A stretch of DNA of 64,000 nucleotides from Styela clava (lineage: Eukaryota), in assembly GCF_964204865.1 (NCBI RefSeq), contig NC_135262.1, positions 6,324,001 through 6,388,000 of the forward strand, written 5' to 3'. Each line of letters starts with the position of its first letter. Position 1 is the stretch's first letter. The notes under the pieces are model-generated. The model made no database searches, was not told the DNA's origin, and saw nothing but the letters and a program-made list of their open reading frames with translations. Of this stretch, positions 25,059 to 64,000 are shown piece by piece. The position numbers were made by a program, and so were the translations under genes.

Positions 25059-25269
25059 ATCTATAGTGACTCATTCCCTTTTGTTAAATGAGTGTTTTTG
25101 AAATTTTTGTCTGGAGGAATAGTCTGGATGAGAGTTCCCAACCTTCTGTGGCCGAATGCTTTTAGCACTTATGGCCCGTCTGTTGCAGTGGTATTTATAG
25201 TGTTATTTTCATTAGCAGAATTAAAAATAAAGCCAGCTTCACGCCTAGCATTGTGCCCCCTCCCCTCAT

Positions 25270-33675: not shown

Positions 33676-36600
33676 ATGGATATATTGCTGAAAACTATAA
33701 TTTTATCGTACCTGGGATGTGTGCTGAAATATTCATTTGCGGCAAACTTAGGTGAGTCTAAGCGCAATATTATAGCCATGTGTAAGCTTCTTTTTCTTAA
33801 GTATAATCGACCACGTTAGTCGCAATTCAATACGGCTTCAAGTTTACGCTGTTAATCGATTTGGCACTATTTAGTCACCGCCATTGACGAATTCTGTACA
33901 GCAATACTAAAACAGGTGACACTGACAATCCTCCTGTTGGGCAAAAAAGTAACTGTTTGGATTCAACAATTTTCAACGAAATACTTGTGATCATAAGGTA
34001 TATAATGAATACCTGTTGAATTATGGATTAGGCGTATGAGTCAGCGAGAAAATATTGCTATTTGCCTATTTCTCACTGGTTTCGTATATATCTCTAGATC
34101 CCATTGTGCAGACGCAATATGGAAAAGTTAAAGGAACGCTCAGAAATGCCATTGGATCCTCAAGGCCCGTTTATTCATATTTTGGAGTTCAATACGGCCG
34201 ATCGCCGGACTATGTTTTTAGGTTCCGGCCGGCCGAAGACCCGTGGACATGGGATGGCGTACGTGACGCTACGAATGAGAACAGACCCATGTGTGTTCAG
34301 GTACAAGTTACATCACAAATGCTCATAAATAACGGTAGCAGAATACATCAAATACTCTTGCTAAACATGTAAACTATGACATAATACACAAAAATATTGT
34401 TTGTTTTAATGGTTTGGGATTTCCCAGATCCATATGTCCTCAGTAATTAGTCAAAATTAAATGTTAATGAGTAGTAACTATGAATCATTGTTAAACTCTG
34501 CTTTATTCCCGTGTCATATATGACGCTTCATTTCAATGTTACCTTGAGTATAAATTTTATATTTGTTGTTTGAGTCTTTTCTAAGCAATGGTATACAATA
34601 TTATATTATATAGATTAATAATAACGAATATCACACCGTTTGTTAACAGGACAGAGTTCGTTTGAACGGCTTACGGAAAGACACGTACCTGAAGTACCTT
34701 TTGCCGGACAACCCGCTCATGAGCGAGAATTGTTTAGTATTGGATATCTTTACTCCACGATCACCCAACGACACAAAAAGAGATAATTTACTACCTGTAA
34801 GCTAATGTAGATATATTCCATTTACGTCGATATTCTTACACTTGAAATTCTATTGAATATTCTTAAATGCTTACTTACATCGATTTAATGCTAGACACTT
34901 TGTCACAGATAAGCCTACTCAATAGGATTATTATTCCAAGATTAAGAGCTTATATTCTAAATCAAAGGTTTCATTAACTACAGTTGAACGATAGCAGTTA
35001 GGCATTCGACAATAAATCATTATAAAATTCTTTCATAGATACTCAAGTCTATTTTTTCCTACGTGTAGGTTGTTTTATGGATTCATGGTGGGTCAATGGA
35101 CGCATTCTTTTCCACAACGAAGTTATGGGGCCTACCTGCGTTTGAAGATGTCGTCTTAGTTCAAATTCAATATCGATTAGGTGTTTTCGGATTTTTAACA
35201 ACGGAAGACAAGTGGGCGCCTCCTAACAATGCTTTTCATGATCATTTGAAAGCAATGAAATGGGTTCAGTAAGTATCATTTATCAGACGATTTGAAACAA
35301 AGAAAGTCATCAAATCCTCGGTATAGTCCGGTGTTATTGTTCATTAATTGTCTAGAATCGATGTCGTCTTGACTAAACGGATATTTACGTGAAAATTTGT
35401 CGAATGCTAATGTATATTTCATTCCCATTGGGGTATTCCAAAACAGTCATAAATCTAGTGGCATAACATAACCACAGTAGAAAAAACATATTACACTCTG
35501 TTCCTATTATAGGAAAAATATTGAGGCATTTGGTGGAAATCCAAATCTAGTCACGCTGATGGGCGAGTCAGCTGGAGCTGTTGCTGCAACAGCACATACT
35601 CTCATTCCGGAAAGCAAAGGATTGTTTCATCGTGTTTTCGCTACAAGTGGTGCTCCTAATTCCATGGTTTGGCCAAAAACATACGGAGATGCAATTGAGA
35701 GGTATTGCACTTTTTATAAAATTTAAATACTAACGGATTAAAAACCACCTCAAGTGTACGAATATGAGGTGTACGGCATGCATAATGGTGTTATTAAACG
35801 ATGCCTCAGGTATGTCGTGTACCACTTTCATTTTTTAAAACACCTGGCCCACTCTCATGAATTAGAAATGATATATATTCTGTGGGGCAAATAGTTAAAG
35901 TAGGTTGTCATGCCATGTTCGGGTTGAGTATAGGTATAAAAAAAAATCAGAAGATTAGAGTATTCATCTGAAGTCGGATCCATACAAAGACATTTTTGGA
36001 AACCTGTGATTTAATAATGGTCTAATAAGTTTCGGTTCAACAAACACATAAAAGAGAAAAAGCTTTTGAATAGATCGAGACCCGTGTAAATAATATACTA
36101 TCAATGATAAAATAAGCAGTTTTTATAAATCTAAAATCTGTATTTGAAATATCTTTCTTAATAAGTATAAACTACAATTTTCCACAACTATCAGCTGTAT
36201 AAATGTGTGGAGGGTGAAGTCGATGAATTGGAAGTGATATTATGAATTCAAGAATTAAATTCATAAATGTTATGTTGAAGAGAACCGCGTACTTCTCTAC
36301 TTATTATTAAAATCGCTTAGAACTTATCTCTATTATTAAAAAGTACTTTGAAATTTACCAATTACCAAAATGATCAGTTACCGATTAATATTAATTAATT
36401 GCACAAAGTAATTGAAACACATTTTATCTAGGATGGCAAAGAACGTGAGCTGCAAATTTGACGACAACGCGTACACCAGTACTTGCCTGAGAAACAAAAT
36501 CTCAACTTCCAGAATTATGAAGTTAGTCAAAGATATGGACATTGTAAGTAAAACGGTATCACAACGGTCTTGTCCCAATGATGGATTAGAATTGATGAAC

Positions 36601-39216
36601 ATTTCAAGCCGTATGCACAATGTTAAATGTGGAGCCTTAGCATTAAGCGATACTGAAGAGTAAAACGTTTCCGTTCAACTTACCCTAACGTGTAATGTTA
36701 ACAAGATGAATACTCCCGAAAGCATCGTTGATAAAATTAAAGTTCCATTAAAATGAAGTGAAATTATGGCTGATGTCTGCTAACATTTTTAAACCTAACC
36801 ATCATGGGATCTCCTTTAAATGGGATCCATATGTATTCACTCATTTCCTAGTTACGTATTTTTACTTTAATTTAACCGATAATTTGGTACGTTTTAACTT
36901 TATGAGCCTATGATAATGTTACTTCAATTTTTCGTAAAAAAAAGGTCTGCTTATCGCTTATAAATGATAGAAGATTTAGTTTTTCACCACTGGCTTCAAC
37001 TATTTCAGAATTTCAAGATGCTAGAAGACCGAGATTTATTTCCAGTTCCGATAAACGAAGCCATCGAAACAAAAACTTTTGTGTCCTCTGTACCAGTGAT
37101 GATGGGTGTTATGAATGGAGAGCAAAACTACTTATTATCTCGGCGCGTATTTTCTAATATTTATTTAAAGGGTGAGACCATCTATGCAATGTTTTATTCA
37201 AGCTATTTTGTTTTAAGCACAGTATACTATATAGTATGTGTGTCTCAACTATGGCTCATTTGTTCATGGCGATTAATACGTACGTTTTCATTGTCAAGTT
37301 CCTTTAATTTGATTTTGATCATAGATAATTTAGAATTGAAGATATAGAAATACGATATGAATGATTGTCCACAAACCCCTTTGTTGAATTCAGAAAATTC
37401 GTTAATTTTTAATATTTGCTGTAACACAGGATTCATTTATGAAATTTCAGGGCCTGATCTAACAAGATCTGAAGCCGAAAGTGCTCTTCGAAATTTATTC
37501 CACGATCGTTATCAGAGTGGAAATGTTGATGCCATTTTAAAGGCTGTTACACTGGAATATCTCGATCCAAAGAAAGTCGGGAACAAGGGAATGAAACTTT
37601 ATAAAGGAACTATGGAAGCAATAGCGGATTGTTGGTTCGTTTCGAAATCTGCAAGGTTCGCAGAAAAAGTAAAAGGTACATCTTTTATAAACTTGAGGTG
37701 TTATTAAATTCAAAAGTGCCTTGTGCGCCATATTTAATATAAAAAATGCAACAAATGGAAGTAAAAAATATATGCATTGCAGTGAAAAAAATAAGCAAAT
37801 TGGAGACAATTTACTTTAAATTGGCATAGTCGTCGCGAATGGCATCAAGAGAAGGCCTCTGCCGAACAATTCATGACCATGTAGGGCAGTGGTTCCCAAA
37901 CCGCGCCTCACGGGCCAAATACGGCCCGCGTAACACTCTAATATAACCCGTCGAACTCATGTAAAATAGTGTAACGTTCTGGATACCGCTAATCGTTACA
38001 TCGTTATCACAGTTCAAGCACGTGTATAATCGTAACAATTCAATTATACTGGCATCTTGAGTATACGTACCGGTATCCGCTTCCTTCCGAAGCACCCTTC
38101 TCTTGGCCTGCGAATATCCTTCCGGTAATTTTGGCATCCGTTCAATCAACTTTGGAAACCGCTTTAGGGGGACCGAAGGTTTACGCAGTCCTTGCTTGAA
38201 ACTTACTGTAATACCTTATTTCCTGTAAATTAAATAGATTTTTTGTTGAAATTACAAACAACAATATACAATCGTTATTAATTTCAGAGTCGGGTCAAAG
38301 GGCATACTTCTTCGAATTTACCTTAAAACCAGCAATGTACGACGCCAGACCCAAAGATTTCCCGCGGTTGTTTAAGTTTGACACAGCAGATCATGCTGAC
38401 GATTTCCCCTACATGTTCGGACTGCCTTTCGTACGAGAATTGGCAGGTGGAGATAATCCTGCATTGTATTTTTCTGATATTGATAAGGAGATAAGCAAGA
38501 AGTTTATGCATTTAATTGCTCACTTTGCAAAAACTGGGTAAGTAGTATTACAGTAGAATTGATAAGAATTTATCAAACTGTTACTAGATGATTTTACGAT
38601 AATGTATCTCAAATAAACGCATGCCGAATGTGGCAGTCCGGTTCTGGGTAGGATGAAGTTATCGACTCGACACAAGTTAGACTCCTCGAGTCACCATTTG
38701 TCTGACTCGAGTGATCTAAATGTAATGACTGTCATCAATTAGACTTACTTCAGTTATCGACTCGATCCGTGACTCGCGACTGGGGACGTTTACACAACAC
38801 TGTAGTGGCACTGTCAATGATTCCGAAAATTCAAGTTTTAATTAACGATGGGTGAAACGTTATGAATGCTCACGACGTGCAGATTGATTTATGACAAAAT
38901 GTCCGTCAAAATTTTTACACAGTCGCTAAAATGGAGGCACAAAACAAGCAGCCACTCAAGGGGTTCATTTTGTTCCATTTAGATATTTATTTTTATTTAT
39001 CCTATTCAATCATTTGACACCTTTATGTTTCAGTGCGTTTAAGTTAATTTTCAATTTTTGCTTTTTTAACCCAGATCTCCGCCGGAAGAACTTGGCTGGC
39101 CGCAGTACCCAAGATACGCAGTAATAAACAAGGGCATCACTATCTCCAAGGATAATTTTCAAAGTAACAGAATGTATTTCTGGAACGAAGTTATACCCAA
39201 ACTAGCTTTTCCTTGA
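33676..39216 (+). CDS. Secreted type-B carboxylesterase; 10 exons
   Basis: Exons 33676-33751, 34098-34300, 34650-34796, 35069-35268, 35513-35701, 36432-36543, 37009-37171, 37451-37675, 38288-38537, 39075-39216 join in phase. Signal peptide MDILLKTIILSYLGCVLKYSFA; SENCL, WIHGG, YRLGVFGFL, GESAG (Ser), GVMNGE (Glu), ADHADD (His). Confidence 0.93.
37888..38164. mobile_element. hAT (Charlie-like) MITE in carboxylesterase intron 8
   Basis: CAGTGGTTCCCAAAC and ACTTTGGAAACCGCT termini. This element accounts for ORF 37871-38149. Confidence 0.7.
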
Positions 39217-40221
39217 CGACCGTTGCTGGCCAGTGAAGCAATAAACGATATGATCTTGACTGGCACTGGTTTTGTTAATTACTTATAAGGGTAAACTTGA
39301 TGATCAGAGCGGAAGAGGTCGTTAGGCTCCCGTTAGCTTCTTCTAAGATCCAGCCTTCGTTATTTTGCGTTTCTGTTCTGAGTTTGGTTTGAGGACATAA
39401 TCGATTTTTGTGTCTAGTTTATTTTAATTCTATGCATTTGATGAATCTAATTTGTGAAATATTGAAAGGATCCGAATATGATTTTAGAAGTGTATATTAT
39501 TTTCTGGCTTTCCTGATCGAACTAAAATTTCCTTGTGATCGAATTTATTTTTTGTTTTAATTGTTGTAAACTTGGCGCATTTTGATAAACAGGAAAAAAC
39601 TATATGTGTGGTTAAATTAATTATACCAACTGCCGAATAAACCTACGATAATGAAAAGCCGTAAATATTATCGGTACCACTTAGGTTTGACTGAAAATGT
39701 TGTATAGTTATATTTAAATTGATCTAGTTTTAATTTCTGTATACCTTTGATTGCTTGGTATGAATGATGGTTAACAAAATAATTATAACTCACATCAAGC
39801 CTATGCAACACTACACTTTGACATCATATTATTGTTATTTTTCGTTCACTTCTGCTTGACTTATCAAGTACGTTTTAATTATCGCGAGTCACTTTTGCGC
39901 TAAAATATAAATCTTCCATTTTAAACGTTCCCCTAAAAATATGGTACCACGATTTTGAATTGTTTGCAGGGTTATCATTTTTTATCTATGTTGGATTATC
40001 AACAATTTTATGTTTGATTATAGCAACAAAGCAATGAAATGAACGATCTTTTTATCACAGACGAGTTTTTATGAGAATGGAAAAGGAGGCCTCGAGTTTG
40101 TCAAATTGCTGGACAACTCGAGTTTAGCATAATTATGGCTAAAAACTGTTTTGTGGAGATTTGTCTCGAAATCATATCTTTAGCTCCAGTTTAATAAAGT
40201 TCATAATAACACGGAAGATTG

Positions 40222-40540
40222 CTCGGCGCGACGGTGTGGCTTATCGTTAGGAATACGCTCGCCATCGCACCTCTGATTACTCTGCGTGGGTTCGCATCCC
40301 ATGCTGGGATAGTTATGTGCTAGAATATTGCTGGACTCCTCGCCGCCGTAGGGTGGTTCACGTAACCGCTGGTTGGCTACGGCTTCCTCCACATCAAGTC
40401 CATGCTTCCGAAAACAAACAACTAACTAATCCCATACCCGACATGGAATGGCGGGCGGACGAGAAGCCGTGGTTCGCCACATGGTTGAGCCGTCTTATCG
40501 GCCTTCCCCTCCTCGGAATAAATATGTAAATCCTATCCTA
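40222..40540 (+). mobile_element. tRNA-derived SINE, best-preserved copy
   Basis: Pol III A-box-like GTGGCTTATCGTTAG and B-box-like GGGTTCGCATCCC; ends AATAAATATGTAAATCCTATCCTA. Diverged copies at about 43400-43620 (-), 46275-46480 (+), 61340-61570 (-) and a fragment at about 29175-29250. Confidence 0.8.
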
Positions 40541-40578
40541 AAACAGACAGACTACCAAAAATAGTCATACGAGTTTTA

Positions 40579-41634
40579 TCACATTTTATTCTCAGATTTA
40601 AATTTCATACAAAGTACAACCCTTTTTAAGTTAGCTTCAATAACATGCACTGTTCTCATTTCGAAAACATCGCGACTTTTAACAAATTCAGTCCAGGCAA
40701 GGACACCCCCACCAACTCCGAAATAATGTGATTTTGAACCCATATAAATCACTCCATCTCTTTTCAGAAATTTTTCTAAAAACGAATGCAACTTGCTATA
40801 GTAAGCTGTATTATAAATCGTTTCAGATGACAAAATAACATCATACTTATTATTATTTGAACAGTCTATGAGATCGGACCAGTCACCAAACATAAAATTA
40901 ACCCTTTTTTTGCAAGATGATAAAAATTTGCAATCTTTCCATAAGTCACTTAACAATGAATCTGTTGCTTTAGAAAGAATCTCTTCATTCGCAGACTCTG
41001 AATCATCCGATTTGCAAGAATCTTTGGTTTGAAATCCTGTCTCCTGGCATGTTGAGATTCCATCCAAATTATGACCAATTTTAAAATTTAGTAATGATGT
41101 TGGACCTGTTGCATCTGTTATTACGTCTTTGTTAAAGTCTTGAAATGTTACAAAGCCGGCTTGTGCACTACATATAGCGTACGTTCCTAAAACTCCAACA
41201 CCACAGCCAAGATCCATAACCCTTTTCCCTTTAAAAATATTTTCCTCTGCATGACGAGATAGGTACTCCAAAACATCAAGAGTGCATTCCCAGACCTTGA
41301 AACCACCTTCATAAACATTAGGTATTAAATCCGATGGTGTAGTCCCAGTACGACCTTTTTCACTTTCATCTTGATCTGTCAAATCACATGGAGTCACAAT
41401 TTGAAGTGAAATTGCTTGCCCCACTTCTAATGTATCCACTTCATACAGATTTTCATCTGGTTTACTTAACCAGCATTTGGCAATGTCCGAAACCTCTAAA
41501 ACGTTGTTCGATTTTAACGGGAACTTCTTCGATGTGCAATCATTTGATATTATGGTTTTGTCTTTTTTAGCATCCAGAGGATCCTTTTGCTTTGTGTCAT
41601 TATCGCCGACATCAAAATTGAATTTAAAATCCAT
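40579..41634 (-). CDS. METTL18: Histidine protein methyltransferase 1 homolog (RPL3 His methyltransferase), intronless, 351 aa
   Basis: FKFNF N-terminus, SDLIPNVYEGGFKVWECT, SAM motif I VMDLGCGVG, FQDFN, YDVILSSETIY, KSHYFGVGGG. Confidence 0.93.
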   Translation of the reverse strand: MDFKFNFDVGDNDTKQKDPLDAKKDKTIISNDCTSKKFPLKSNNVLEVSDIAKCWLSKPDENLYEVDTLEVGQAISLQIVTPCDLTDQDESEKGRTGTTPSDLIPNVYEGGFKVWECTLDVLEYLSRHAEENIFKGKRVMDLGCGVGVLGTYAICSAQAGFVTFQDFNKDVITDATGPTSLLNFKIGHNLDGISTCQETGFQTKDSCKSDDSESANEEILSKATDSLLSDLWKDCKFLSSCKKRVNFMFGDWSDLIDCSNNNKYDVILSSETIYNTAYYSKLHSFLEKFLKRDGVIYMGSKSHYFGVGGGVLAWTEFVKSRDVFEMRTVHVIEANLKRVVLCMKFKSENKM

Positions 41635-42150
41635 TTGATTGATTCAGACTAGGTAATATATAGTTTTAGTAAACAACTGTTATAAGCAAAAAAGTTTCAA
41701 ACTTAAATTTAGAAGAACAGATAAGTATATAGTACCACATAGACATAGTACCAAGCAAAATGTACCAAGTTTTTTGGCTGCTCTCCAATTTTTAGAAATT
41801 ATCGAAGCTGTTATCTTTTCTTGTCAATTGTAACTAACTTTGCTTAACATGGGATTGATTGTGCAAAATGATATTGGCAAATACATATCTTAACTAGTGA
41901 ATAGATTCAAAATTATAACAGAATTGTAGTGACTGAAAATATCAATACAAACAAAAATTCTTGACGCATGATTACATACACATTCAACATCACCAGTAAA
42001 ATTTATAAGGTACGCCTGAAATATGCTCACCAGAATCTCGCACAACCTGGATCCTGAGTTCAGGTTGTGCGCCATCTTGGTGCGCATACTTCAGGAGGTC
42101 CAATTGTAACCTAAAGGCAATATGCAGAATCCAAGAGTAACTAACCAATA

Positions 42151-45100
42151 TCATAAAAATGTTTGATGTGATTTTCCTAAAGACGATAACATGATTTGAA
42201 AACGTTCATTAAGTGAAGAATGTTCTGTTATAAACTGTCCATCAGAAAGCATAAAGTATTGTAGAAATAAATTAACTCCTTGTTTGACAAGTTTATTCTT
42301 TGACGTTCTCAGCTTTTCAAAAATAGTTTTCAAATGATCCTCGCTCGAAGCTTTTTCCGCCACCAAACAAAGAAACAACCTAAGGAATCTGATCATAGGT
42401 TTGTCTATTTCTGTGAAATCTATCGCCTGAAAATTATTAAGAAATCAGGTTGCATATATACTCATATAGAACATTGAGAAATATATCTATAAGGTTAGTA
42501 TTAAAAAAAATGCAACTGTTATATGCATACAAGTGGGAAAATTCTCACATGGTGGTTCTGGTTAAAAATAAGAACATGAACCCCAAACTACAAAAGTAAA
42601 TCCCAGTTAGGGTGGAACACCTGTTTCAATAAGCCAATACAATAAGCAATATTGTATTATTCAAATTCGAAGACTCATTCGAAAACAAAATGTTATGAGA
42701 TGCTTATTCCCTTTGAGCAAGCCCCACTGAAAGAGATATGGTACTATTTTTGGAATCGGCAACCAAACCGTTCTGGTTGCCTACACAATTAATATTATTA
42801 CAACTTGTTATTATTATTATTATTACAACTGTGGGTGGAATTTTAAACCAAATGTGTGGTATTGCATAGAAACACAGTCAAGTCTAACACTTTAACCACC
42901 AGGCCTTTAAGGGGATCGAATGATAAGAAATAAGCTTTGTTTACGACGACCTCATGGAATATTCAAAGGTCTTTCTCTCAAAAACACAAGGTATCAAAAA
43001 CGATAATTTTGTACATACCTTCAAACAAGATAAACTTAGTGTTTCCATGATTATAAGTCGAGATAATAACTCAACGATGTTGTTCATCTGACTTTGTTTG
43101 AGAGAATCAATTGCCTTGAATTTATCCCAGAAAGTGCATTGTAAACTGATCCCAAATTGACTGAAAAAGTAAAGACTTTCATTTTTGTATTTTCAATTTA
43201 TACCACTGACCTCACGGAAAAAATAGATGGGGCGGAAGGGGAATAGAGCTCCCTTCACAATGCATCCATTATTAGAGAAATCAAAAAATGGTCTAATGGT
43301 CTAATGTGAATCACCAATGATACTCAGGTATGAAAACACAAATTCGCCAATATAAATCAACCATAGTGTCCAAACCACAGTAACACAGCTTCCCATTAAG
43401 TTACCAGTCCGTGTCAGGTATTAGAATATTTAATTTGTTTGACATGAGTGGTTTTGATGGTGGAGGAAGTCGTAACCAACCAGCAGTTATGATAGCTACT
43501 CTATAAAAATGAGGAGTGCAGCAATACTCGTGCACATAATTATTCCCACAGAATTTGAACCTGAGTAGGTTGAAAAGGGGTGCGACCATGAGCATGTTTC
43601 TAACCCATGCACATAAAACGCAGCGCTTTCTTGTTAAAATCATCTTCACATGCGGTTAATACCAACCTACCGATCATTTTGGCAAAATCTGTCAAGTAAA
43701 TGAAGATAATAAGGATTGAATAATTTTTCTTGTTGGCAGCAGTCGACGATTACATTTGGTATCTCTCTCAATTGTTTACCCTGAAAATGTAAGAAATAAA
43801 ATAGATCAAAAGTGGAAACAGACTCAATTTGGATTTTAACAGATACTGTACTACTTTCCGTATTATATTTTATATAATACACTGACTTGTTTAGTCTGCT
43901 ACTTTTAATAATGAAATTAAAACTACCAGAATAATCTGATAGAGTAGTATTTTGGGTGGAGGAATTCACAAATCTTGTCATAAAAAGCGTAGATTAATCA
44001 TTTTATTTATGAAAATTCATTCTGCCAATAACCCATAATCAAATTCCATTTACTCACCTTCAATCCACATTTCAAGACTTTTTCATAAGCATCGACAAAA
44101 TCATCTGCAGTCATAACGGCATAAAATATATTTCTACGAACGTCAGTATTCATTCTTTGTCTTTTTGCAGCATCGGCAATATTTTTAGATACAGAAAAAT
44201 CAATTTTTATTTCATTTTCATTTTGCTTGTTTCCTGTTTTATCCAACATTGGTCTACCAGCAAAGGAACTGCCTACAATCCACCATCTACCATTGGTTTC
44301 AGCATCTAGAAAATCCTGAAATAAGTATGATTATAAATTTATAAACTAGAAACAATAACAATGAAAAAAATTTAACAAATATATTTTTAGTTAACCACAA
44401 TTGTAAGCAATAAGTTTCAATTTTGAATTAGGTGAACAGTTAGCTTAATAGTACCTTCATTTATTTGCCGTGCTATGAGATAAAAATACAAGCAAAGAAA
44501 AATAGAGATTTTGGGCTGCTTGTAGCATATTTTGGTTAGGGATGCTCATCTATGGAAAATCTTTCCTTTTAAATTATATACTAAACAAGGTTTGATTGGG
44601 AAGGCCAGAATCATTGACTCAACTTGAGTGACCCTACTCATCTAAACAAAATGATGCAAACTCATACTCAACTAATCACCAATGAGACTTATTTCAGTAC
44701 TTGACTCGGCTCGGATGACCCATGGTTTGATTGAGGAGGCCTGAGTCATCACCTCAACTCAAGTGGTACTGACTCAAAAACGCATGCTCAACTAACCAGC
44801 AGTGATACTAAACACTAAACACTTTTCTGCATATTGATTCATCGGACCTCCAGAAGTATGCGCACCAAGATGGCGCACAACTGGTTAGGATTCAGGTTGC
44901 GCGACATCTTGGTGCGCATACTTCTGGAGCATCGATTCATCAGCATCAACATTAAATATTATCACTTCAAGCAATACATAAAATTAAAGATGTAACAAAT
45001 ATCATAAATTCATTTTCATAGATATATCCTATATATATGAAGTGTTGACTGTACCTGTAACTTAACTGGGGGTACAGTATCAGAACTGGAATCTCCAGTT

Positions 45101-47683
45101 GAATTTTTTGTCAGTGCAGCAAATTTTTTTCTCATCTTAGAAACTGCATCGGGGTCAAAACCTACAAGACAAACTTCGTTATTGCCTAACATTTACTCTA
45201 AACAAAGCACATAGACTTTAACACAAGCCACTACGTTTTTAAAGACTATAACTCAAGCAATGACACACAATGAATTGGGTAAGCTATGCTCATATTATTA
45301 TTAATCCCACAGATAAATATATATATGAATACTACCTTGTTGTGATCAAATATGAAAAGAGAACTGAATGGGATGGGAATTGAAAATACGGTTTTAGAGT
45401 GAACATGATAAATTTTCAACCATCAATGTTTCAATTTTAAGCATTGTTTCGAAACAAAATTAGTTGTCAAACCAATCACGCATCATAATTAATACTGCAT
45501 GGCATCTGCGCAGTCTTTCTATTGTTAAAAAAATAACCAAGTATTAATCTTCAATAAGCAACCTGTGACTTTTCTGATATTGTTGTTTTTGACAGCCATC
45601 AATATGTTCAACATAAAAGACATTCTTGAACCATCATCCATGGACACATTCAATTCTGTAAAAAAATAGTGCAATAATGTCCTAAACATAATATACTTGA
45701 CGAATGGAAATTTGTTTAAATTTGGATTAAAGATTATATCGTAAAAAAATTCTTTCACGCAATGTAGGTGCATAATAACTCAGCAGTATTATTAAGTGCA
45801 GCAATTTATAAACTAATCAAAGTGTACAAAATTTAGGACATGAGTTGCACATATTACTAGTTAATGATCCATTATTAAAAATTGGAAGACAAACTTGAAC
45901 AGCGATTGTATCCATTTGGGGTAGAAAAAAGCAAACTAGAAATGTTTTATAAAATATTGGTAACCATGGCTACAATACCTTCACATTTTGAGTTAATTGC
46001 CTTGATTATATCTTTCAACGATTCCGGGTCGTCTTTTCGGAGTTGAAATCCAACTTTGTTCAATATATCGAGTACAAGTTCCATGTCCTTTTCCGTAAAT
46101 GATGAAATTAATATTCGAAAGATGTCAAGAATAACCTTGCAGTCTATTCTTTTTAATTGATATAAACATCCCAAGACTTTGAGCAAATTATTTGCAGCTT
46201 TTCCATGGACATTATCTGAAACAATGTTCGATTAAAAAAGGCATAAAAAAGGCAACAAAATTACCTCCAGTCCCAATCGTGATAAGCATTAGGAACACAC
46301 TTGTCATCCCATCTCTTATTACCCTGCGTGGGTTCGCAGGTCCAAAACTTATGGGGCATAATTATGTACGATAAGATTATTGGATCCCTCGTCATCTCAG
46401 AACTTCACCTAACTACTGGTCTGCCACCATCAAGTCAGTGTATCTGAAACAAATACCTGTTTGTCCCACATACAATCCAGGTGTGTAGAATGTGAAAACA
46501 AAATAGAAACAATAAAAAAATCACCTTTTGCAAGTATGATCGAATTGAGCTTTGTAGATGTTGTTTCATAGAAATGCATTAGGGATTCAATTCCCACTCT
46601 TGTACTTATGATCGACACCAACATGGCAGTTTCATTGATTAAACTGTCAGGTACAGGATCGGCCGCACTAAATTGATCCATGACCACGTCAGTCAAAACT
46701 TTATACATAATGGCTCTACTTCCTTCTCTAAATAGCATTTCAATATCATTGCATATATTGCTCATGTTTGCATCACTGAGTCTATTAAATAAACCTTTAA
46801 CTTTTCTTTTTAGTTTTTGTATATTTTGTTCTTGTTCTTGAGAAAGTTTGACACGCATTGCAGGAGGAATGTACTTTCCTGTGTTGGTGGTTTCAGAATC
46901 TCCAGCAATCATATTAAAATCATCTTGTGAATTATCGTTATCAGATTCCTCTAAAGTTTCATCAAAATCCGCCTCTTCCGGCTGAGATTCATCATCTTTT
47001 TCCAATTTTTTTTCAGATTCTGCCTCCTCTAATCGAGAATTATCATCTTTTTCCAAGTCTGAATCTTCATTTTCCTGATCAGATAAATTCATTTCTTGTT
47101 CATTGTTATTGATTTCATCAGTAAAAAAGTCATCCTCTTCCTCTGCTATCATTTCATCTTCAGAATTTTCACCCCCATTGTCGAGAGCACCTAAGATATA
47201 GTCCAAACCAGCATCAGTGAAAGATTTCGGCAGCTTTTTTGTATTTTTTCGTTTATTTAGATACAATTTTTTCTCCAGAGAAGTAATTACTTTATCATCA
47301 GCAGCATTGTCCCTTGCAAGTGATTTTTTTTGTCGTGTTTTCTCAGTTTCAATTTTCCTTTTTTTCTTTTCAGGTTTGTTAGTTTCGTTTGATTTTACAG
47401 GTTTGTTAGTTTCGTTTGATTTTATTGTCGATTCAAGAGTCACTTTTTGATTATTTTGTTCAGTATTTGATTTATTTTTTGATAGAAATTGGAAATGTTT
47501 TAGTTTATTTTCCTTCTTGTGACGTTTTTTGTCTCTTCTTTTTTGTTTTCGTCCTACTTTAATTGGATCACGATTTACCAATCCAGTACTGGTATCATCA
47601 GATTCACCATATTTTCGAAAAACTTTTTCAATAGTTGAATTGAGTTTTATTGATCCATCTAACCTTTTTCTCTTCATAGACAT
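42151..47683 (-). CDS. NOM1: Nucleolar MIF4G domain-containing protein 1 (Sgd1 homolog); 8 exons
   Basis: Exons 47683-46525, 46215-45979, 45655-45563, 45161-45055, 44315-44058, 43780-43671, 43160-43019, 42426-42151. Motifs KYIPPAMR, VKGLFNRLS, GFQLRKDDP, GRWWIVGS, QRMNTDVRRNIF, EKLFNPYY. Confidence 0.95.
43400..43620 (-). mobile_element. SINE copy in NOM1 intron 6
   Basis: Reverse complement of the 40222 SINE body (GATGGTGGAGGAAG.CGTA.CCAACCAGC.GTTA; GCACATAATTAT). Confidence 0.75.
44843..44934. mobile_element. Palindromic MITE with 6-bp TSD in NOM1 intron 4
   Basis: CTCCAGAAGTATGCGCACCAAGATGGCGCACAACCTG and its inverted copy; perfect TSD ATTCAT. Further copies at about 32225-32310, 42008-42102, 57026-57257 and 60637-60748. 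Confidence 0.88.
46275..46480 (+). mobile_element. SINE copy in NOM1 intron 1
   Basis: TTAGGAA.AC.CT.G.CATC.CA.CTCT.ATTAC.CTGCGTGGGTTCGCA matches the 40222 SINE. Confidence 0.75.
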
Positions 47684-48611
47684 GCCTAATTTCTATCCTA
47701 TAATTAGAAATATAAACTGGAGTAATTAAACTTTATTTATTTTAAATGGTGCTTATTTAAACCTTTTGCTCTGAAAGGCCGTGTACAACTTGAAATCTTT
47801 TATATAGGCTAATCTATCGACATTAGACATTTCACATTGAACAGGATAATGGAGAGCATTGAGGGATAAAGGAAAACGACACAATCAATGGCTTCAAGAG
47901 GTGATAAATCACAGAAGCGCACCAAATACAATACAAATACAAGCAAATATACCTCATGAAATCTGAATTGGTAACCAATATAAATCTATAAAATACAGGA
48001 GATGAGGCCATTGGTTCAATGCTGATTAGGAATTCAAAATTCAAATGCATGGTTTAATACAATAATCTATGAAATCTTATATGCTGATTAATCAATGATG
48101 AATCATCAATAATGAAAAAAAAAGTTAGATAAAAGATATCGATAAATCTTATGACACAATTTTTAAAATTAATATTATATATCTGTCAAATAATAATATC
48201 TTTACAAATTATGAGCATCCAGGATGATCAAACTTCTGCTATTATAAAACTAAAGTAGTCGGTATAAAAATCAATAAGCGGGGAAAACACATAGCATAAA
48301 TATTAATAGACCAACTCTTAACATTATCAGCCATAAAGATGAGACAACAGTGGCCATATTCAATGTTTAGTAATGAAGAGACTAGAGATGGGTCACTCAA
48401 ACTCGACCCCGTTAGGGGGAAGGGGGCACAGAAAGAACTCATGGCGGTCAGGAGCAAAGGCCTCGACCAAGTACTAATCCTAATGATTACATTACTTTAA
48501 ATATGAATTGACTATGATTCATGCTATCTTAATTAACCATTTGCATAATATTTCAATTTTCCATCAAAATAATTCCTTGCATATTGCACAAATACAAAAT
48601 AACAATTAATT

Positions 48612-50438
48612 TCAGAGTTTTGATTTGCTACTGTTGAAAGCACCCACAACCGCACTCCATAATGATCCTGGATTGACAATATCAACCAATTTTTGAGTTG
48701 GATCAACAGCATACTGATCCATATCTGTGATGCCTTCTTCCGTCAATACTTCATCATCAATGAAGAAGTTACCGGTACATTTTGTGCAATCCCGCAACAA
48801 AATTGCATAACTTGCATCTCCCATGATGTCAGGCTTCCTAAAATTAAAGATATTATCAAGTTTCATATTTCAATTAAAACGGGTGCATATTATTATTTAA
48901 GCATATAGTCGAGATTTTTCGAAGATGAAGATTTCTAGGAGATTGAGGACAGATAAAATATTTGTTATGGTAACCTGCCTTTATGTTCATCAGTCCGGCT
49001 TCAGACATGCCTTCAAGTTTCCACAGATATGACCGTTAATAGTGACAGACTGACAGTCATGTTTTTTCCAGCCGGTAAAATTAAAAACGAGAATATTGGT
49101 CAGAGACCGAAGACTTATCGATCGAAAGTTAGGGGATCCCCCAAAACAGCGCTGTTACTCCATAGTGACACCTTGTGTCCCATCACTAATTAATTGATAA
49201 CTCGCTAATTATACGACCAAAATCAATAGGCTTCTGGTACGAGATATGATGAATGCACATGCGAAATCTGCAGCAGATCCAATCTCGCTTTCGTGAGATA
49301 TCGCGTGCATCTAACAGACAAACAGACAGACAAATACCTATCAACATACTTACCGATTAAAATCGATAAGTAATGATAGCCATGGCATACAAAACGACAA
49401 CAATAAACTGAATGCGCAATTTTACTGGGAAGGGAAGAAGTGAGAAACTGAAGCTACAGTAATTATCAAGCAGCGACACTTAGGGTTCTAATATCTAGGT
49501 AATCGAAATTGAACAGAAAATTAATTTTTTTCAGAACTGTTACTGTGGAGAGCAATTGCTCGCTAGAGATTATATTGCAGAGACATGCAACTCTACCAGA
49601 TGGCCAACCACAAGTTTTCCTGTCTCATGTGGACTATGTGGAAGAGCAGATTATAAAAAGTTAAATGTGATGAAAAACAGTTAAGGTCAAAAAAGATTGT
49701 TGATTATATAACTGAATAAAGCATTTCAAATTTCAAAATTTCAAAAATATTGCTGAGCAATTACCTAGACATTGCAGCTGCCATTTTATTTCCTCCTGTT
49801 ATCATTTCTACTGCAGCAGTTATGACAGTTGTTCTTGGCCAAAGTGAATTTACAGCTATTCCCTCTTCCGCAAATTCTTCTGCCATTCCAAGCGTACACA
49901 TTGACATTCCATATTTTGCTATGGAGTACGCACCATGACTCGCAAACCATTTCGGTGACATATTTAGCGGAGGACTCATATTTAAAATATGAGCATTCCT
50001 GCCTGCTTCTCTGGACTTCAGCAAATGAGGAATGCATAATTTTGAGCAAAGATAGGTTCCACGTGCATTTACTTGATTCATCAGATCATATGTCTTCATT
50101 GTAGTATTCTTGGTATCAGTGAGACTAATAGCACTAGCATTATTAATCAAAATATCAATTCCTCCAAAGGTTTCAACTGTTTTATCAATAGCAGCTTGGA
50201 CTTCTTCTTCTTTTCTAACATCTACGATACAAGCCAGCCCTTTTCCCCCAGCTTGTGTTATTTCTTCGACTGCTGTATGTACTGTGCCAGGTAATTTGGG
50301 ATGTGGGTCAGAAGTTTTTGCTGCAACAACTACGTTTGCCCCATCACGAGCCACTTTCAGTGCAACGGCTTTGCCGATACCTCGACTAGCTCCAGTGATA
50401 AAGACAGTATATCCTGCAAGTTTCCCACAATTCTGCAT
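48612..50438 (-). CDS. HSDL2: Hydroxysteroid dehydrogenase-like protein 2, SDR domain only, PTS1 -SKL; 2 coding exons, 299 aa
   Basis: Exons 50438-49765 and 48837-48612. Motifs TGASRGIG, AAKTSDPHPKLPGT, NNASAI, ILNMSPPL, catalytic YSIAK, CTGNFFIDDEVL; ends SKSKL*. Confidence 0.93.
49086..49374. mobile_element. Non-autonomous Helentron/HINE (DINE-1-like) element in HSDL2 intron
   Basis: Subterminal inverted motif ACTTATCGAT (about 49113) / ATCGATAAGT (about 49362), internal (CAGA)n tract, and terminal hairpin TACTTACCGAT-TAAA-ATCGATAAGTA. Confidence 0.6.
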
Positions 50439-51160
50439 TATCTTTATGTTCAGTTGGCCAAGCAAACTACAAATAGGAATTATAGGGATATCTATTTAAA
50501 AAGTCAGAAAATACAGAAATAGAAAATATATTACTTATCTACAGTAAAACAAAGTATAAATGCTTAACCAATTATTTATATATAGATATATATATTAATT
50601 TCAGTAGATTCAGAGATTTGTTTTGATCAATTATTTTATCGCCTGCTGGTTAAAGAGTCAAAATAAACCTATACTTTGTATTTGCAAATTCGGAATACTT
50701 TCCAGGGTGGGGTGGGCAAAGTATGGCCCCATGTCCAAAAATATTTTCTATCTAGAATGGCGGGCCATGTAAGTGTGACACAAAAGTTACATTTATTGAA
50801 CGATATTTACAACTGTACAATGTTACAAAAGCAAAAAACAATAAGCCAAAACTAAATTTATTCACAATTTTCAACAAATTCCTTGAGTTATTTTTTAGCT
50901 CGAACATCAAACTTTGGTTTTCAGGTTTTAGTTTGTGGCAGCATCAGGCGGGTCAGATCGTATTACCCAACTGAACGGATTTGGCGCGCAGGCCGTAGTT
51001 TGCTTTGCCCATGTCAGCTACTACGACTACGAGGTATGGCTAAAAAGAAACGGGACTGACGTCACAGATTGCGCAACACGATTAACTATCGAAATTCGAA
51101 ACGTCGACAAGTTATATCGTTTTGTTATACACCGGTTGTGTTTTATTTATCTTTGGTTAA

Positions 51161-51429
51161 CGAGTATGCCTGCAACTGCACGAAAGCTCTTCTTGTAATG
51201 GGAGATGGAAACGTGGCTGTTTTCATTTACAACTTCAATAGCGAGGATAAATATATTAAATTAAATGTGTTTGGTTAGAATACTGTGCAAGGGATAACAA
51301 AGTGACAGGAAAACGTGCTCATATACCGGTACCGAAAGGCATACCGGTACCGTACAGTATTCGGCACGCAAAGGATGTCTCAACTTATCATTTTCAAGAA
51401 GAGCCTTCGTGCAGTTGCAGGCATACCCG
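51161..51429. mobile_element. TTAA-flanked foldback MITE
   Basis: About 35-bp TIR CGAGTATGCCTGCAACTGCACGAAAGCTCTTCTTG / CAAGAAGAGCCTTCGTGCAGTTGCAGGCATACCCG, with TTAA on both sides. Confidence 0.75.
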
Positions 51430-51569
51430 TTAACCGCCATCGCATGGCGAGTTAGCCGTCAGCCCATCAAAGTCAACTCCCCCAACTTGTCTACGGTCTG
51501 ACGGTACGATAAATCACTACGGTAACAAAGGCAATTAATTTTTAATAGACAAGTGGGGTCTCATTTACT

Positions 51570-51730
51570 TTCTTACCTCATACCTGAATACCTTCTAGTG
51601 GGCGTGGCGTAACAAATAAGACATACCGTACCGGTATCCAAGACAAAAATCCCACGTGCCCAATGGCTGCTGGACTGAATCATTTATCCGTTTATATTTA
51701 ACGACCTGACAGCGCTAGCATAACGCTTGA
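51570..51730 (-). promoter_or_regulatory. Candidate promoter/5' non-coding exon upstream of HSDL2
   Basis: CpG-containing stretch with GGGCGTGG (GC box) and CACGTG (E box), next to minus-strand donor-like GAG|GTAAGA at about 51576. Confidence 0.35.
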
Positions 51731-52640
51731 GAGAGAAAAGGGTTAGTAAATGGATATTGGTTTTCACATTCTGCTCATTCGAAAATCTCGTAATTATCTA
51801 CATTGTAATTTTTTTTAAATGATAATAAAAGACATCCCCCAAAATAAGCCCTGGTGCTATTTTTTGAAAGAAAATTCATGTGTATCCATCTCCCAGATAT
51901 CTCTGCATTCTGTTTTGGTTAAGTCAGAAGACAGAAATATCAGCGTCAGTCGTTAAACGTTTAAATAGCATATCACAAACTTCAATACTGTTAAAATACG
52001 TCAGCCGAGTAATGATTTAAATAGCATTTCATCGTTCAACTTCATTACTGTTCAAAACAATCAGTCATAAAATGTTTTTAAGTAGCATTCCCTGTAACTT
52101 GCAGAAAATGCAAGGCAGATTCCCAGCATACCCTTCCAAATTGTCACGCTTGCTGCAGATTACCCACACCTGTTTTTCACTATATGCACATGCACAACTG
52201 CTCATGATGGAGTTCACATTATTTATCAATTCTGTTGTACAAATAAATTTGTTGGGAAGCCGGGGAAATAAGGCACTCACAATTTATTGCACAAACCTCA
52301 TTAAAATTAATTTCTACAGCACCAAATCACACAAATTCACAGTCGAGATATTTATATACAACATAAAGCAGGAAAAAAATGTTGGATTTGGCAATAATCC
52401 ATACAATCACTGAGTTGCATGTGTTGTAAATAATTAGTCAATGTTGATGGTAACCAGTGGCGCATCTGGGGTGTGGCAGCCATGGGCACCGTTTGAACAG
52501 GGCTGCATAAACGGCAAGAAGTTTTAATCGTAAAATATTTCAATAAAATTATTTAAATTGAAAATGACCCAAACTCCTATTTTTACTCAAATGATAAAGT
52601 ACCTAATGAATATCTCATTTCAATAACAGTCATTATAGAC

Positions 52641-54911: not shown

Positions 54912-57900
54912 TTAGTCCCATTCATCCTCATAAAATTCCTCTTGCTCTTGTGCCTCTTCATTATCGTCTCTTTGAAGGTTTAAATTTCCGAGCATATCTC
55001 TCATGGCGACCATTAAAGCTTGGAATTGTTGATGCAATCCGGCTTGACCAGGCTGTAGCGCTGCTGCTCCTTCTTCCTCAGTCTCTTGTGATGGATCAAA
55101 TTGAGGCATGAGTGAGTGTAGAAACAATCCGAGTGAGTTTCCTGTTCTTCCACGACGAGCCCTGTAAAAGCAAACATAGAAGGGTTCAGGATAAAATTAT
55201 TCCAGTCAAAATGATGAATATTTAATTTTGATCAGTCACGTACACCACTCCGCAAAGATCAATCAATCAGTTTCAAAACCCCATGGCTCATTCAGTAATA
55301 AATTTGATATGGTTATAATTATTCAACATGAGATCAATTATGATTATTCAAAATGAGTACTATTGCATCATATTGTGCATATTGAATGCTAGAATGGTTT
55401 TAACCTGGCTAGCTCCAAAGATCACCTTTCTGTGATTAATAAGCATTTTTAACAACTTGCATCTTTCCCTATAAATAAAATCCTATCATATAATGACAGG
55501 TTAGATAACCTCGAGTTTAAACCCATGCACAGCACCTAACCCAGGGTGCAACAAATTGCACTTTCACTTCAATTACTGGACCCATTGCTTTAAAATTTTC
55601 AGTGGTTAGAAATTGTATTTGTCACTGAAAGGCCATTACTTTTATTTATTTAAAAAAAATTTGTCGGCTCTCCTGTCTTCATTTTTACTGGCATTGGTAA
55701 ATATTAACCTAAATATTTCATATTGTATTCTGGTTATCCAAAGGCCATTAATATCATAAATTGACTGCTACCTACCTTTCTGGTCTTTCATAAGATCTAA
55801 TTCCATCTGCTGGTGGCAATGGATCGTGACCAAAAACCTGTTCCAAACGAATCTCCTATAATAGAATATATATATTTTAGAAATTGATAGCCAATAAAAA
55901 ATACCATTAAGTTGTTTTGTTTGGTGGTCACACTCAGGTTCAATCATACCATTACCAGAATGTTCAACACAAATTGAGTATTTGGTTAACTTCAAAATTG
56001 GTTACATCGAAATCAAAATACTGTATACTAAATCTTCGATTTAGGATTAATTCAGCAGATTTTCATTTGAATACTTGTTAACAAATTTGACATATAATAG
56101 TAAAACCAAAAATATACCCACTATTTTAAGGTTTGATTACTATCAAAAATAGAAAATCAATCAGAATAATTTGATCCCAATTGCTCTGCATTTCTTAATT
56201 GAATTTCCCTAACTTCATAAAAATAATATGTGCAAATTGAACTGGTGAACATAACTTATTTTGAAAACATTATTTCAGAATGTATTCATACTCATACTCC
56301 TAAATTATTCAATTTTGGCCATCCCTGCTCAATATACTTAAGATTTTAGGGAACAATCAATTTCAATTGTACAACTCTAGTCGCTATTGTAAACTCCTCT
56401 CTTTACATTATGCATTTTTCACTATAAAGCCTTTCATACCCATAGCCGTAGACCATGCAAAAATACTATATTGAAGGTTTTGAAGCTTCAAATTTCCTGC
56501 ACAAACTTAGTAAAATAACAAATTACTCTGACGGAAGAATGTTATAAAACTATATTTGCATACCGGTGGTAAAAGATCAATTACTCCAGGTAATTCACAA
56601 ATCATTGCATATCGATAAATATTTCTTGGTGGTTTCTGATATCTTTTCCTCCTGTATATAAGAAAAAAAACTGAATTTAAAAAACAAGTAAGGCATATTG
56701 GCTTTCGTACTAAACTAGATTGATGACCCCATGTCCTAATAAATAACAAAATAATAAAGTGAAACCAATACCTTTGCCTCCATTTAGCAATTTCAGGATC
56801 TTTCGCATCAACTTTGTCAAGAACAATATTAACATTTTTTTCCAACCAGGAGAAAACTTCGGGTGATTTCCATAAAGAATGATTTCTTGCAACAAATAAA
56901 TTACAAAGCAATTTCAAGCCAGCTGGTGAACTGAAAAATGATATAGAAATTACAGTAATTAAAATTATTAATATGAATCTCACCAGGATTTAATTTAATA
57001 TACTCAGTTTACTGTATATTGGTTTCAGCGCTCCTGTAGTATGTGAACCAAGATGCCGGACACCGGAAAGTAGTACCAGGTCAGGGTTAGGCCATAAATT
57101 TATCGCAATTTTCTTTATTTTGGTTTTATCCAGAGTTCGGAGACTAGCCAAGTGACTCCCGTAGTATTTGTACCTGAAATTATGGCCTAACCATAACCTG
57201 GTACACATACTACGTTCCGGTGTCTGCCATCTTGGTTTACATTCTATGGGAGTACCGTATATTCACAGTCCTTAAAACAATGAATGAACTTTGCTTGGCT
57301 ACTTCAAAGGTGACGTGAACAAGAAATTTTAGTATCCGCTCAGACACTAGTTATTTGTCAGCTTATAATAGTGTTCCCAAAATTTAAAAGTAAAAAGAAT
57401 GTCCCTAAAGGAGTTCTAGCTCATGTGAAGTAATCGAAAATTTAAACTGAGAAATGCTATAATAGACAAGGCAAAAATTAGCTATCATATACCCCAAAAT
57501 AGTACACCATATATAACTGGTAGGGAGAAACAATATAGTTTCCTTCTTGCCAAAAATTTGTACCGTAACTTACGTCTGTTCAGCTTCCGTTGTAAAAAAG
57601 CTGTGATCTGATACTTTTTTATCTGGTTGTACTGAACATTTTTCCAAAAGTAACATCAGAACCTTAAAAGAATAATTGTTCTTTAACAGTGGTTGGCTTA
57701 TACCTTTTTACACTATTATCGCAACTATTGAACTCTTATATTATCAAACCTACTGTAAAAGATGTTAAGAAATATATAAAATAAAACTTACGGAGGGAAA
57801 CTTGATCAAAGCATCTTGTAGCTGTAAAGTAATAGAAATAAAATTTCCTTAAATTGTAATATTAATGCATATATCTCTGGTTCCTTAATGACAAATGAAA

Positions 57901-63952: not shown

Positions 63953-64000
63953 AATCCAGGCTTACACAAAATAATTTTACTATACCGTAGTCTAATTCTC

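What the first reader, a model, noticed from the sequence alone, without database searches (positions are those of the whole stretch)
40579..50438. Candidate trans-spliced eukaryotic operon HSDL2-NOM1-METTL18
Three unrelated housekeeping genes are co-oriented, with 928 bp (HSDL2 stop to NOM1 ATG) and 516 bp (NOM1 stop to METTL18 ATG) between them. On the minus strand, overlapping AATAAA hexamers at 47741-47732 are followed by AG acceptors at about 47718, 47698 and 47686, then the NOM1 ATG at 47683, leaving no room for a promoter. A variant hexamer ACTAAA (41670-41665) precedes TTACCTAG (41649), 14 nt before the METTL18 ATG. In Ciona operons the upstream poly(A) site abuts the downstream SL trans-splice acceptor with no intercistronic DNA, which is this layout. 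Promoter-like sequence appears only upstream of HSDL2.
Basis: partly seen in the sequence, partly recalled or inferred. Interest (0 to 1): 0.8.

Follow-up and report, generated by a model that had tools for sequence, protein, structure and literature searches.

The report
Probable sea-squirt three-gene operon
Three unrelated housekeeping genes in a sea-squirt genome sit head to tail in one block that looks transcribed throughout, so they probably form an operon of the kind already known from the sea squirt Ciona; the decisive leader-sequence evidence was not obtained.

Summary
The motifs themselves are chance-level (AATAAA occurs 1.5 times per kb per strand).

The genome is an ascidian's. About 20% of Ciona genes lie in such operons, so this is a known kind of thing.

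**New evidence for one transcription unit**
- RNA contigs from three studies show NOM1 spliced (8 exons).
- The NOM1-METTL18 spacer is covered at exon-like depth in 3 of 4 runs. One contig ends about 13 nt before the METTL18 acceptor AG.
- One contig runs unbroken from NOM1 exon 1 to 130 nt upstream of its ATG.
- CpG observed/expected defines one uninterrupted depleted domain, 40,501-50,900. It matches the three-gene block, both spacers included (0.50 and 0.43), and is flanked by CpG-normal DNA (1.0-1.4).

**Not shown**
- No spliced leader on NOM1 or METTL18, no poly(A) site, and HSDL2's 3' UTR was not examined.
- I could not find this species' SL RNA gene.

**Odds:** three-gene operon about 0.45; at least NOM1-METTL18 about 0.7.

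The scan has flagged two other operon candidates elsewhere in this genome. Ordinary if true.

The parts
40501..50900 (-). Single uninterrupted CpG-depleted domain that coincides with the three-gene block
   Evidence: Two-state HMM on 100-nt bins gives one depleted segment, 40501-50900, at all three transition settings. The loosest setting splits other regions into islands of 600-1000 nt.
50740..51750 (-). Candidate promoter region of the unit: CpG-normal, GC-richer island with TGACGTCA at 51064-51057
   Evidence: CpG o/e 1.03-1.3 and GC 0.38-0.42; motif read from the sequence. No TSS data.
48611..50438 (-). HSDL2-like short-chain dehydrogenase gene, 2 coding exons (50438-49765 and 48837-48611 including the stop)
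   Evidence: Translation; Pfam adh_short E 1e-34; best PDB match human HSDL2 3KVO, E 3.6e-88. The intron is inferred from GT..AG and the reading frame and was not checked with RNA.
47684..48610 (-). Spacer 1 (927 nt): proposed HSDL2 3' UTR, single copy, no credible ORF
   Evidence: CpG o/e 0.50 (11 observed, 21.9 expected); unique in the genome; only short random ORFs. The only AATAAA lies at its far end.
47797..47806 (-). TATA-like TATATAAAAG, 115 nt upstream of the NOM1 ATG (supports the rival own-promoter reading)
   Evidence: Read from the sequence. The X2 contig extends upstream of it to 47813.
47732..47741 (-). Two overlapping AATAAA hexamers
   Evidence: chance rate 1.5 per kb per strand.
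47686..47718 (-). Four AG dinucleotides proposed as trans-splice acceptors of NOM1
   Evidence: Positions confirmed. The X1 contig ends at 47693 and the X2 contig runs through them. No leader was seen.
42151..47683 (-). NOM1-like gene (MIF4G + MA3), 8 exons; introns 46216-46524, 45656-45978, 45159-45559, 44315-45053, 43780-44056, 43161-43670, 42426-43017
   Evidence: GT..AG joints appear in contigs of all four RNA runs (table 5); Pfam MIF4G and MA3 on single exons.
41635..42150 (-). Spacer 2 (516 nt), transcribed; most likely the NOM1 3' UTR
   Evidence: Contig depth in 41820-42019 is 12.9, 13 and 41.9 in X1, X2 and X7, against 8.8, 33 and 99 on NOM1 exons. X7 record 14 runs 158 nt past 41820, to about 41662. 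CpG o/e 0.43.
42041..42110 (.). Hairpin MITE inside the NOM1 3' UTR; a second copy lies at about 44845-44935 in NOM1 intron 4
   Evidence: It breaks the RNA contigs and draws hundreds of foreign contigs. One arm has 6,468 genome matches.
41649..41670 (-). ACTAAA (41670-41665) and the acceptor-like AG (41650-41649), 14 nt before the METTL18 ATG
   Evidence: The inferred end of the X7 contig, about 41662, falls between them.
40579..41634 (-). METTL18-like histidine methyltransferase gene, single coding exon, 351 aa
   Evidence: ORF; Pfam Methyltransf_16; PDB 4RFQ, E 8e-39.

Best explanation
The HSDL2-like, NOM1-like and METTL18-like genes are one polycistronic transcription unit of the Ciona type.

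Transcription would start in the CpG-normal island about 0.3-1.3 kb upstream of HSDL2 and run about 10 kb to just past METTL18. The long 'spacers' are the 3' UTRs of the upstream genes. Each downstream mRNA would be freed by addition of the spliced leader at an unpaired AG just before its ATG, next to the upstream gene's 3' end.

- Shown: co-orientation, gene identities, expression and splicing of NOM1, RNA over most of spacer 2 and over the last 130 nt of spacer 1, and a single CpG-depleted domain.
- Inferred: the single promoter, the poly(A) sites, and leader addition.

I put the full three-gene operon at 0.45. I put at least the NOM1-METTL18 pair at about 0.7.
For: **RNA contigs**
- Runs X1, X2, X3 and X7 come from three studies and are RNA: seven GT..AG NOM1 introns are removed in all four.
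- Intron bins have depth at or near zero in X1-X3.
- The first 330 nt of spacer 2 that were laid have exon-like depth in three runs.
- X7 contig 14 (406 nt) aligns to 41820-42055 and has 158 more letters past the low end. That puts its end near 41662, 13 nt from the AG at 41650/49 and 28 nt from the METTL18 ATG. It does not continue into METTL18.
- X2 contig 9 is continuous from 47354 to 47813. The run-over counts imply contigs crossing 47819 in X3 and X7.

**CpG o/e**
- Spacer 1 is 0.50 and spacer 2 is 0.43, like the gene bodies (0.61-0.73).
- Flanking DNA is 1.15 downstream of METTL18 and 1.0-1.43 from 300 nt upstream of HSDL2.
- The HMM gives one depleted segment, 40501-50900.
- In Ciona, gene bodies of broadly expressed genes are methylated, while promoters and intergenic DNA are unmethylated (PMC3827831).

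**Literature**
- Ciona has 1,310 candidate operons, 185 of them with three genes. They are defined as same-strand pairs less than 100 bp apart, usually directly abutted, and are rich in single-exon genes (PMC2760879; PMC1488885).
- METTL18 here is single-exon.
Against: - No spliced leader and no poly(A) tail was seen on any contig. Repeat-derived contigs swamped the loose-end table: 310 rows were hidden.
- Contigs cannot show RNA ends or strand.
- X1 has no RNA upstream of 47693.
- The depth arithmetic on X2 contig 9 suggests the part upstream of about 47700 is rare RNA.
- A TATA-like box sits 115 nt before the NOM1 ATG.
- CpG bins 47251-47750 are near normal (8 observed, 9.3 expected), so a small NOM1 promoter is not excluded.
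- CpG depletion is a proxy carried over from Ciona, not measured methylation. A 3' UTR of an independent gene would be depleted too.
- I could not find an SL RNA gene in this genome.
Confidence: 0.45

Rival explanations
1. Only NOM1 and METTL18 form a two-gene operon. NOM1 has its own promoter in the last 100-300 nt of spacer 1 (TATA-like box at 47806-47797) and a short outron. HSDL2 ends earlier and is a separate unit.
For: - TATATAAAAG lies 115 nt upstream of the ATG.
- CpG o/e is about 0.86 across 47251-47750.
- X1 shows no RNA upstream of 47693, and X2 contig 9 stops at about 47818 instead of running on.
- Pair 2 has the stronger RNA support.
Against: - X2 contig 9 starts upstream of the TATA-like box.
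- Contigs in X3 and X7 cross 47819.
- Spacer 1 as a whole is as CpG-poor as gene bodies. The likelihood ratio is about 70:1 for a depleted (0.6) over a normal (1.1) rate, computed from the counts.
- The HMM finds no CpG-normal island there, even at its loosest setting.
Confidence: 0.25
2. There is no operon. These are three tightly packed independent genes with long 3' UTRs, and each downstream promoter is embedded in or just after the upstream gene's UTR. Any RNA across the junctions is UTR, read-through or outron.
For: - The motifs are chance-level.
- No leader, poly(A) tail or bridging molecule was shown.
- Contig ends upstream of NOM1 differ in all four runs.
- 0.5-0.9 kb is enough room for a compact promoter.
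- CpG depletion of a UTR does not need an operon.
Against: - RNA reaches to about 13 nt from the METTL18 acceptor and 28 nt from its ATG, and stops there. That leaves no untranscribed DNA for a promoter.
- In Ciona, active promoters stay unmethylated even inside methylated genes (PMC3827831), yet neither spacer shows CpG recovery.
- Both downstream genes are housekeeping genes, expected to be active in the germ line.
Confidence: 0.25

Closest known systems
Ciona intestinalis SL-resolved operons (Satou et al. 2006, PMC1488885; Satou et al. 2008, PMC2760879)
   Same: - Ascidian host.
- Co-oriented, functionally unrelated housekeeping genes.
- The upstream 3' UTR appears to run up to the downstream acceptor, with a very short downstream 5' UTR (3-37 nt after an AG).
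- No AATAAA near the NOM1 3' end, as in 16 of 18 Ciona junctions.
- A single-exon member.
- Three-gene operons are common there (185).
   Different: - This is a different and much larger genome (377 Mb), with a spliced leader that is not the Ciona 16-mer.
- Direct abutment and leader addition are not shown here.
- The inferred end of the NOM1 contig is about 13 nt short of the AG.
- The HSDL2-NOM1 junction carries a canonical AATAAA, which most Ciona junctions lack.
- The single-exon gene is the last member here, whereas in Ciona single-exon genes are especially common as the first member.
Caenorhabditis elegans SL1-type operons (as discussed in PMC1488885)
   Same: No intercistronic DNA, and a canonical AAUAAA just upstream of the downstream acceptor. 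This is the layout proposed for HSDL2-NOM1.
   Different: A nematode system with separate SL1 and SL2 leaders, and there is no evidence here for the molecular steps.
Oikopleura dioica operons
   Same: A tunicate in which one leader serves both monocistronic genes and operons, and upstream cistrons lack AAUAAA (PMC1488885).
   Different: Oikopleura has short but real intercistronic spacers and a 40-nt leader (my own knowledge). Its genome is far more compact.

Membership tests
Ciona-type SL-resolved operon | Adjacent genes on the same strand | tested here: met
   All three ORF sets lie on the minus strand with no gene between them.
Ciona-type SL-resolved operon | Upstream mRNA 3' end less than 100 nt from the downstream mRNA 5' end (operational definition, PMC2760879) | tested here: inconclusive
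   NOM1-METTL18: the X7 contig runs to about 41662, 13 nt from the AG at 41650/49. This rests on the contig's length past the laid stretch, and contigs do not prove ends.
Ciona-type SL-resolved operon | Downstream mRNAs carry the spliced leader at an unpaired acceptor | tested here: inconclusive
   No leader letters appear in the rows shown. 310 loose-end rows were hidden behind repeat contigs, and short leader tips are probably lost when reads are assembled into contigs (my inference).
Ciona-type SL-resolved operon | RNA that bridges the cistron boundary (polycistronic precursor) | tested here: inconclusive
   X2 contig 9 bridges the proposed NOM1 acceptors, from 47354 to 47813, but was not followed into HSDL2. 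The METTL18 boundary lay outside the laid stretch.
Ciona-type SL-resolved operon | One promoter for the unit, none before the downstream genes | tested here: inconclusive
   Indirect support comes from one CpG-depleted domain, 40501-50900, with CpG-normal DNA only outside it. Resolution is about 300-500 nt, and a TATA-like box is present at 47806-47797.
Ciona-type SL-resolved operon | The organism performs SL trans-splicing (has SL RNA genes) | tested here: inconclusive
   - The Ciona leader has only 2 chance matches in the genome.
- No multi-copy AAG|GTA...AGCTTTGG gene was found.
- The claim therefore rests on general knowledge of tunicates and on unchecked earlier notes of an SL RNA array in this genome.

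The most novel reading that the evidence does not exclude
This is a genuine three-gene operon in an ascidian with a genome three times the size of Ciona's. Its cistron junctions are bridged by 0.5-0.9 kb 3' UTRs, one of which carries a transcribed MITE. Its extent can be read from the DNA alone as one CpG-depleted domain. That would make CpG-domain mapping a sequence-only predictor of operons in methylating trans-splicing animals, and would show that Ciona-style abutted operons are general to ascidians.
Probability: 0.4. Interest if true: 0.3.

Novelty: new member of a known kind. Interest (0 to 1): 0.2.

Why it matters
If confirmed, it is one more ascidian operon, in a species other than Ciona. 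That helps gene annotation, because operon genes are often mis-fused or given wrong ends. It also helps comparisons of operon content between ascidians. It does not change what is known about how operons work.

The one transferable point is methodological. The CpG-depleted domain matched the proposed transcription unit almost to its ends, so a whole-genome scan for multi-gene CpG-depleted domains could nominate operons without RNA data.

Tried and rejected
**Finding the species' spliced leader or SL RNA gene**
- The exact Ciona 16-mer gave 2 chance hits.
- The 18- and 19-mers with 2-3 mismatches gave no multi-copy AAG|GT gene.
- Searches for the leader's 3' half, its 5' half and the Ciona Sm motif showed no excess over control.

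**False leads from that search**
- A tandem tRNA array on contig 3 has ATTCTATTTGCATAAG (15/16 to the Ciona leader) before each tRNA, but no GT donor follows it.
- A dispersed repeat holds ATTCTATTGGAAAAAG.
- Other false leads were segmental duplicates, a 62-nt minisatellite, a 3-copy tandem on contig 5, and a dispersed TE family that also occurs in the HSDL2 intron.

**Reading trans-splice sites from contig ends**
- Three of four ends fall at an AG (47693, 47660, 47813). Their offsets are mutually inconsistent with one leader, and 47660 lies inside the coding sequence. I rejected these ends as technical.

- Rfam found nothing in the block except sub-threshold miRNA-like hits on the MITE hairpin.
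- The Ciona operon paper that I text-searched names none of these genes.

- Spliced gene models were searched exon by exon only.
- Read laying allowed one call of 6,000 letters. Both junctions together need about 6,100, so I chose 41820-47819. That left the METTL18 acceptor and most of spacer 1 unseen.
Full report
**What is there**

The window is AT-rich (35% GC) and lies at G000:C17:6,324,001-6,388,000 of a 377-Mb assembly. Earlier notes of this scan call the genome a sea squirt's.

Three genes lie on the minus strand.
- An HSDL2-like short-chain dehydrogenase: ATG 50438, two coding exons, stop 48613-48611. Pfam adh_short has E 1e-34, and the best solved relative is human HSDL2, 3KVO, E 3.6e-88.
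- A MIF4G + MA3 protein: ATG 47683, stop 42153-42151. It has no solved relative at E 0.01 or better. That excludes CWC22 and eIF4G-type proteins and leaves NOM1/Sgd1 by elimination.
- An intronless 351-aa METTL18-like methyltransferase, 41634-40579. It matches 4RFQ at E 8e-39.

The spacers are 927 and 516 nt.

A fourth co-oriented housekeeping gene, TCF25, ends at about 54,915, 4.5 kb upstream of HSDL2. The nearest recognisable genes below METTL18 are on the plus strand.

Spliced models were searched exon by exon. The joined step was left out.

None is informative.
- AATAAA occurs 1.5 times per kb per strand and ACTAAA 0.5 per kb.
- Thirteen AGs lie in the 150 nt before the NOM1 ATG.

**RNA evidence**

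One search for sequencing runs returned nine probable RNA runs from three studies, kept as assembled contigs, and no raw-read runs. The two junctions are about 6,100 nt apart, so I laid 41820-47819.

The runs are RNA. Seven GT..AG introns of NOM1 are removed in all four runs, which gives an 8-exon gene (table 5). Intron bins have depth at or near zero in X1-X3 (table 2).

*NOM1-METTL18.*
- The spacer bin 41820-42019 has depth 12.9, 13, 0 and 41.9 in X1, X2, X3 and X7. NOM1 exons have 8.8, 33, 13 and 99.
- X7 contig 14 (406 nt) aligns to 41820-42055 at its positions 159-394. It therefore carries 158 more letters beyond the low end.
- If those letters are collinear with the genome, the contig ends near 41662. 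That is between ACTAAA (41670-41665) and the AG at 41650/49, and 28 nt before the METTL18 ATG.
- The contig does not run into METTL18, so this RNA is more likely the NOM1 3' UTR than a METTL18 5' UTR.
- A high-copy MITE at about 42,041-42,110 breaks the contigs between the NOM1 stop and this piece.

*HSDL2-NOM1.*
- X2 contig 9 runs unbroken from 47354 through the ATG, all four proposed acceptors and the AATAAA to 47813, plus 5 unmatched letters.
- Its mean depth (24.7, against 33-39 on neighbouring exon contigs) fits an exon part at full depth and an upstream part at depth of only a few.
- X1's contig ends at 47693, with nothing upstream.
- The counts of contigs running over the stretch ends imply contigs crossing 47819 in X3 and X7.

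*What could not be seen.*
- No leader letters and no poly(A) tails appeared in the rows shown. Repeat contigs filled the loose-end table, and 310 rows were hidden.
- Contig ends upstream of NOM1 differ between runs (47693, 47813, 47641, 47660) and cannot be read as splice sites.
- Short leader tips are probably also removed when reads are assembled into contigs; this is my inference.

**CpG evidence (new, from the sequence alone)**

In Ciona, gene bodies of broadly expressed genes are almost fully methylated. Promoters and intergenic DNA are unmethylated, even when a promoter sits inside a methylated gene (PMC3827831). Methylated CpGs decay over evolutionary time, so CpG observed/expected marks DNA that has long been methylated.

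| Region | CpG o/e | Observed / expected |
|---|---|---|
| Downstream of METTL18, 36,001-40,578 | 1.15 | 172 / 149.7 |
| METTL18 coding sequence | 0.73 | 23 / 31.5 |
| Spacer 2 | 0.43 | 6 / 14.0 |
| NOM1 gene | 0.61 | 93 / 153.1 |
| Spacer 1 | 0.50 | 11 / 21.9 |
| HSDL2 gene | 0.66 | 44 / 67.0 |
| 300-1,200 nt upstream of HSDL2 | 1.03-1.30 | 46 / 37.5 |
| 2,000-4,476 nt upstream of HSDL2 | 1.43 | 121 / 84.9 |
| TCF25 (part in window) | 0.64 | 160 / 251.8 |

- Positions 1-40 kb of the window average about 1.1.
- A two-state HMM gives a single depleted segment, 40,501-50,900, at all three transition settings. The loosest setting splits other regions into islands of 600-1,000 nt.
- The domain therefore starts about 460 nt upstream of the HSDL2 ATG, ends within 80 nt of the METTL18 stop, and has no CpG-normal island at either spacer.
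- Limits: this is a proxy carried over from Ciona. Resolution is a few hundred nt. Bins 47,251-47,750 are near normal (8 observed, 9.3 expected). The 3' UTR of an independent gene would also be depleted.

**Spliced leader**

The Ciona leader ATTCTATTTGAATAAG (PMC1488885) has only two chance matches here. Searches with mismatches, with half-leaders and with the Ciona Sm motif AGCTTTGG (PMC7986045) found no multi-copy AAG|GT gene.

The pattern search itself does see high-copy DNA: it returned 6,468 matches for the MITE arm. So this species' leader differs from Ciona's by at least 3 of 19 positions, or its genes are absent from the assembly.

Earlier notes of this scan report an SL RNA array in this genome. 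I could not reproduce that and do not rely on it.

**Reading**

Ciona has 1,310 candidate operons covering about 20% of its genes. There, operons are defined as same-strand pairs less than 100 bp apart, and 185 of them have three genes. They are usually directly abutted, mostly lack AATAAA at the junction, and are rich in single-exon genes.

The present block fits that pattern, and nothing seen contradicts it. The defining events remain unseen. My odds:

| Reading | Probability |
|---|---|
| Three-gene operon | 0.45 |
| NOM1-METTL18 operon only | 0.25 |
| Three independent, tightly packed genes | 0.25 |
| Other | 0.05 |

The scan has two other operon candidates in this genome on other DNA (s1-812138 and s1-819884); no follow-up report is listed for either.

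**Verdict**

It is a known kind of thing, so low interest.

Noticed in passing
window 42041-42110 and 44845-44935: These are two copies of a roughly 90-nt hairpin MITE, one in the NOM1 3' UTR and one in NOM1 intron 4. One arm (31 nt, up to 2 mismatches) has 6,468 matches in the genome. RNA contigs carrying it reach summed depths of 7,000-30,000, so the family is massively present in transcripts. It gives a sub-threshold mir-559-like Rfam hit.
   Followed up: partly
G000:C3:24,847,000-24,923,000 (L013 = 24,899,000-24,908,999): This is a tandem array of tRNA genes: 29 tRNA hits in the 10 kb I fetched. In that 10 kb, ten of the 82-nt tRNA genes are preceded, about 40 nt upstream, by ATTCTATTTGCATAAG, and the motif recurs about 70 times across roughly 75 kb. 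It matches the Ciona spliced leader at 15 of 16 positions and contains the octamer ATTTGCAT. It can pair with AAAATAGAAT 6 nt downstream. No GT donor follows, so it is probably an upstream promoter element and not an SL RNA gene. The resemblance is still odd.
   Followed up: partly
window 54915-63961, minus strand: A TCF25 gene is co-oriented with the block (Pfam Tcf25 on 56507-56983; C-terminal exon ending ...EDEWD at about 54915). It has its own CpG-depleted domain. A 4.5-kb CpG-rich stretch (o/e up to 1.95 at 53.2-54.4 kb) separates it from HSDL2.
   Followed up: partly
window about 49440-49500 (HSDL2 intron): This is a copy of a dispersed repeat family (core TAGRTRTTAGAACCTTGGGTGTCG, at least 66 genome matches). 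Young TE insertions probably explain why this intron has CpG o/e 0.87 inside an otherwise depleted domain.
   Followed up: no
window 23401-25500: This is a third CpG-depleted segment in an otherwise CpG-normal 40 kb, possibly another methylated housekeeping gene. It was not examined.
   Followed up: no
window 50439-50480: HSDL2 itself has an acceptor-like TTTGTAG 30 nt before its ATG, at the end of a 300-nt CpG-poor stretch. The first gene of the block may therefore also be trans-spliced, or may have a 5' UTR intron.
   Followed up: no
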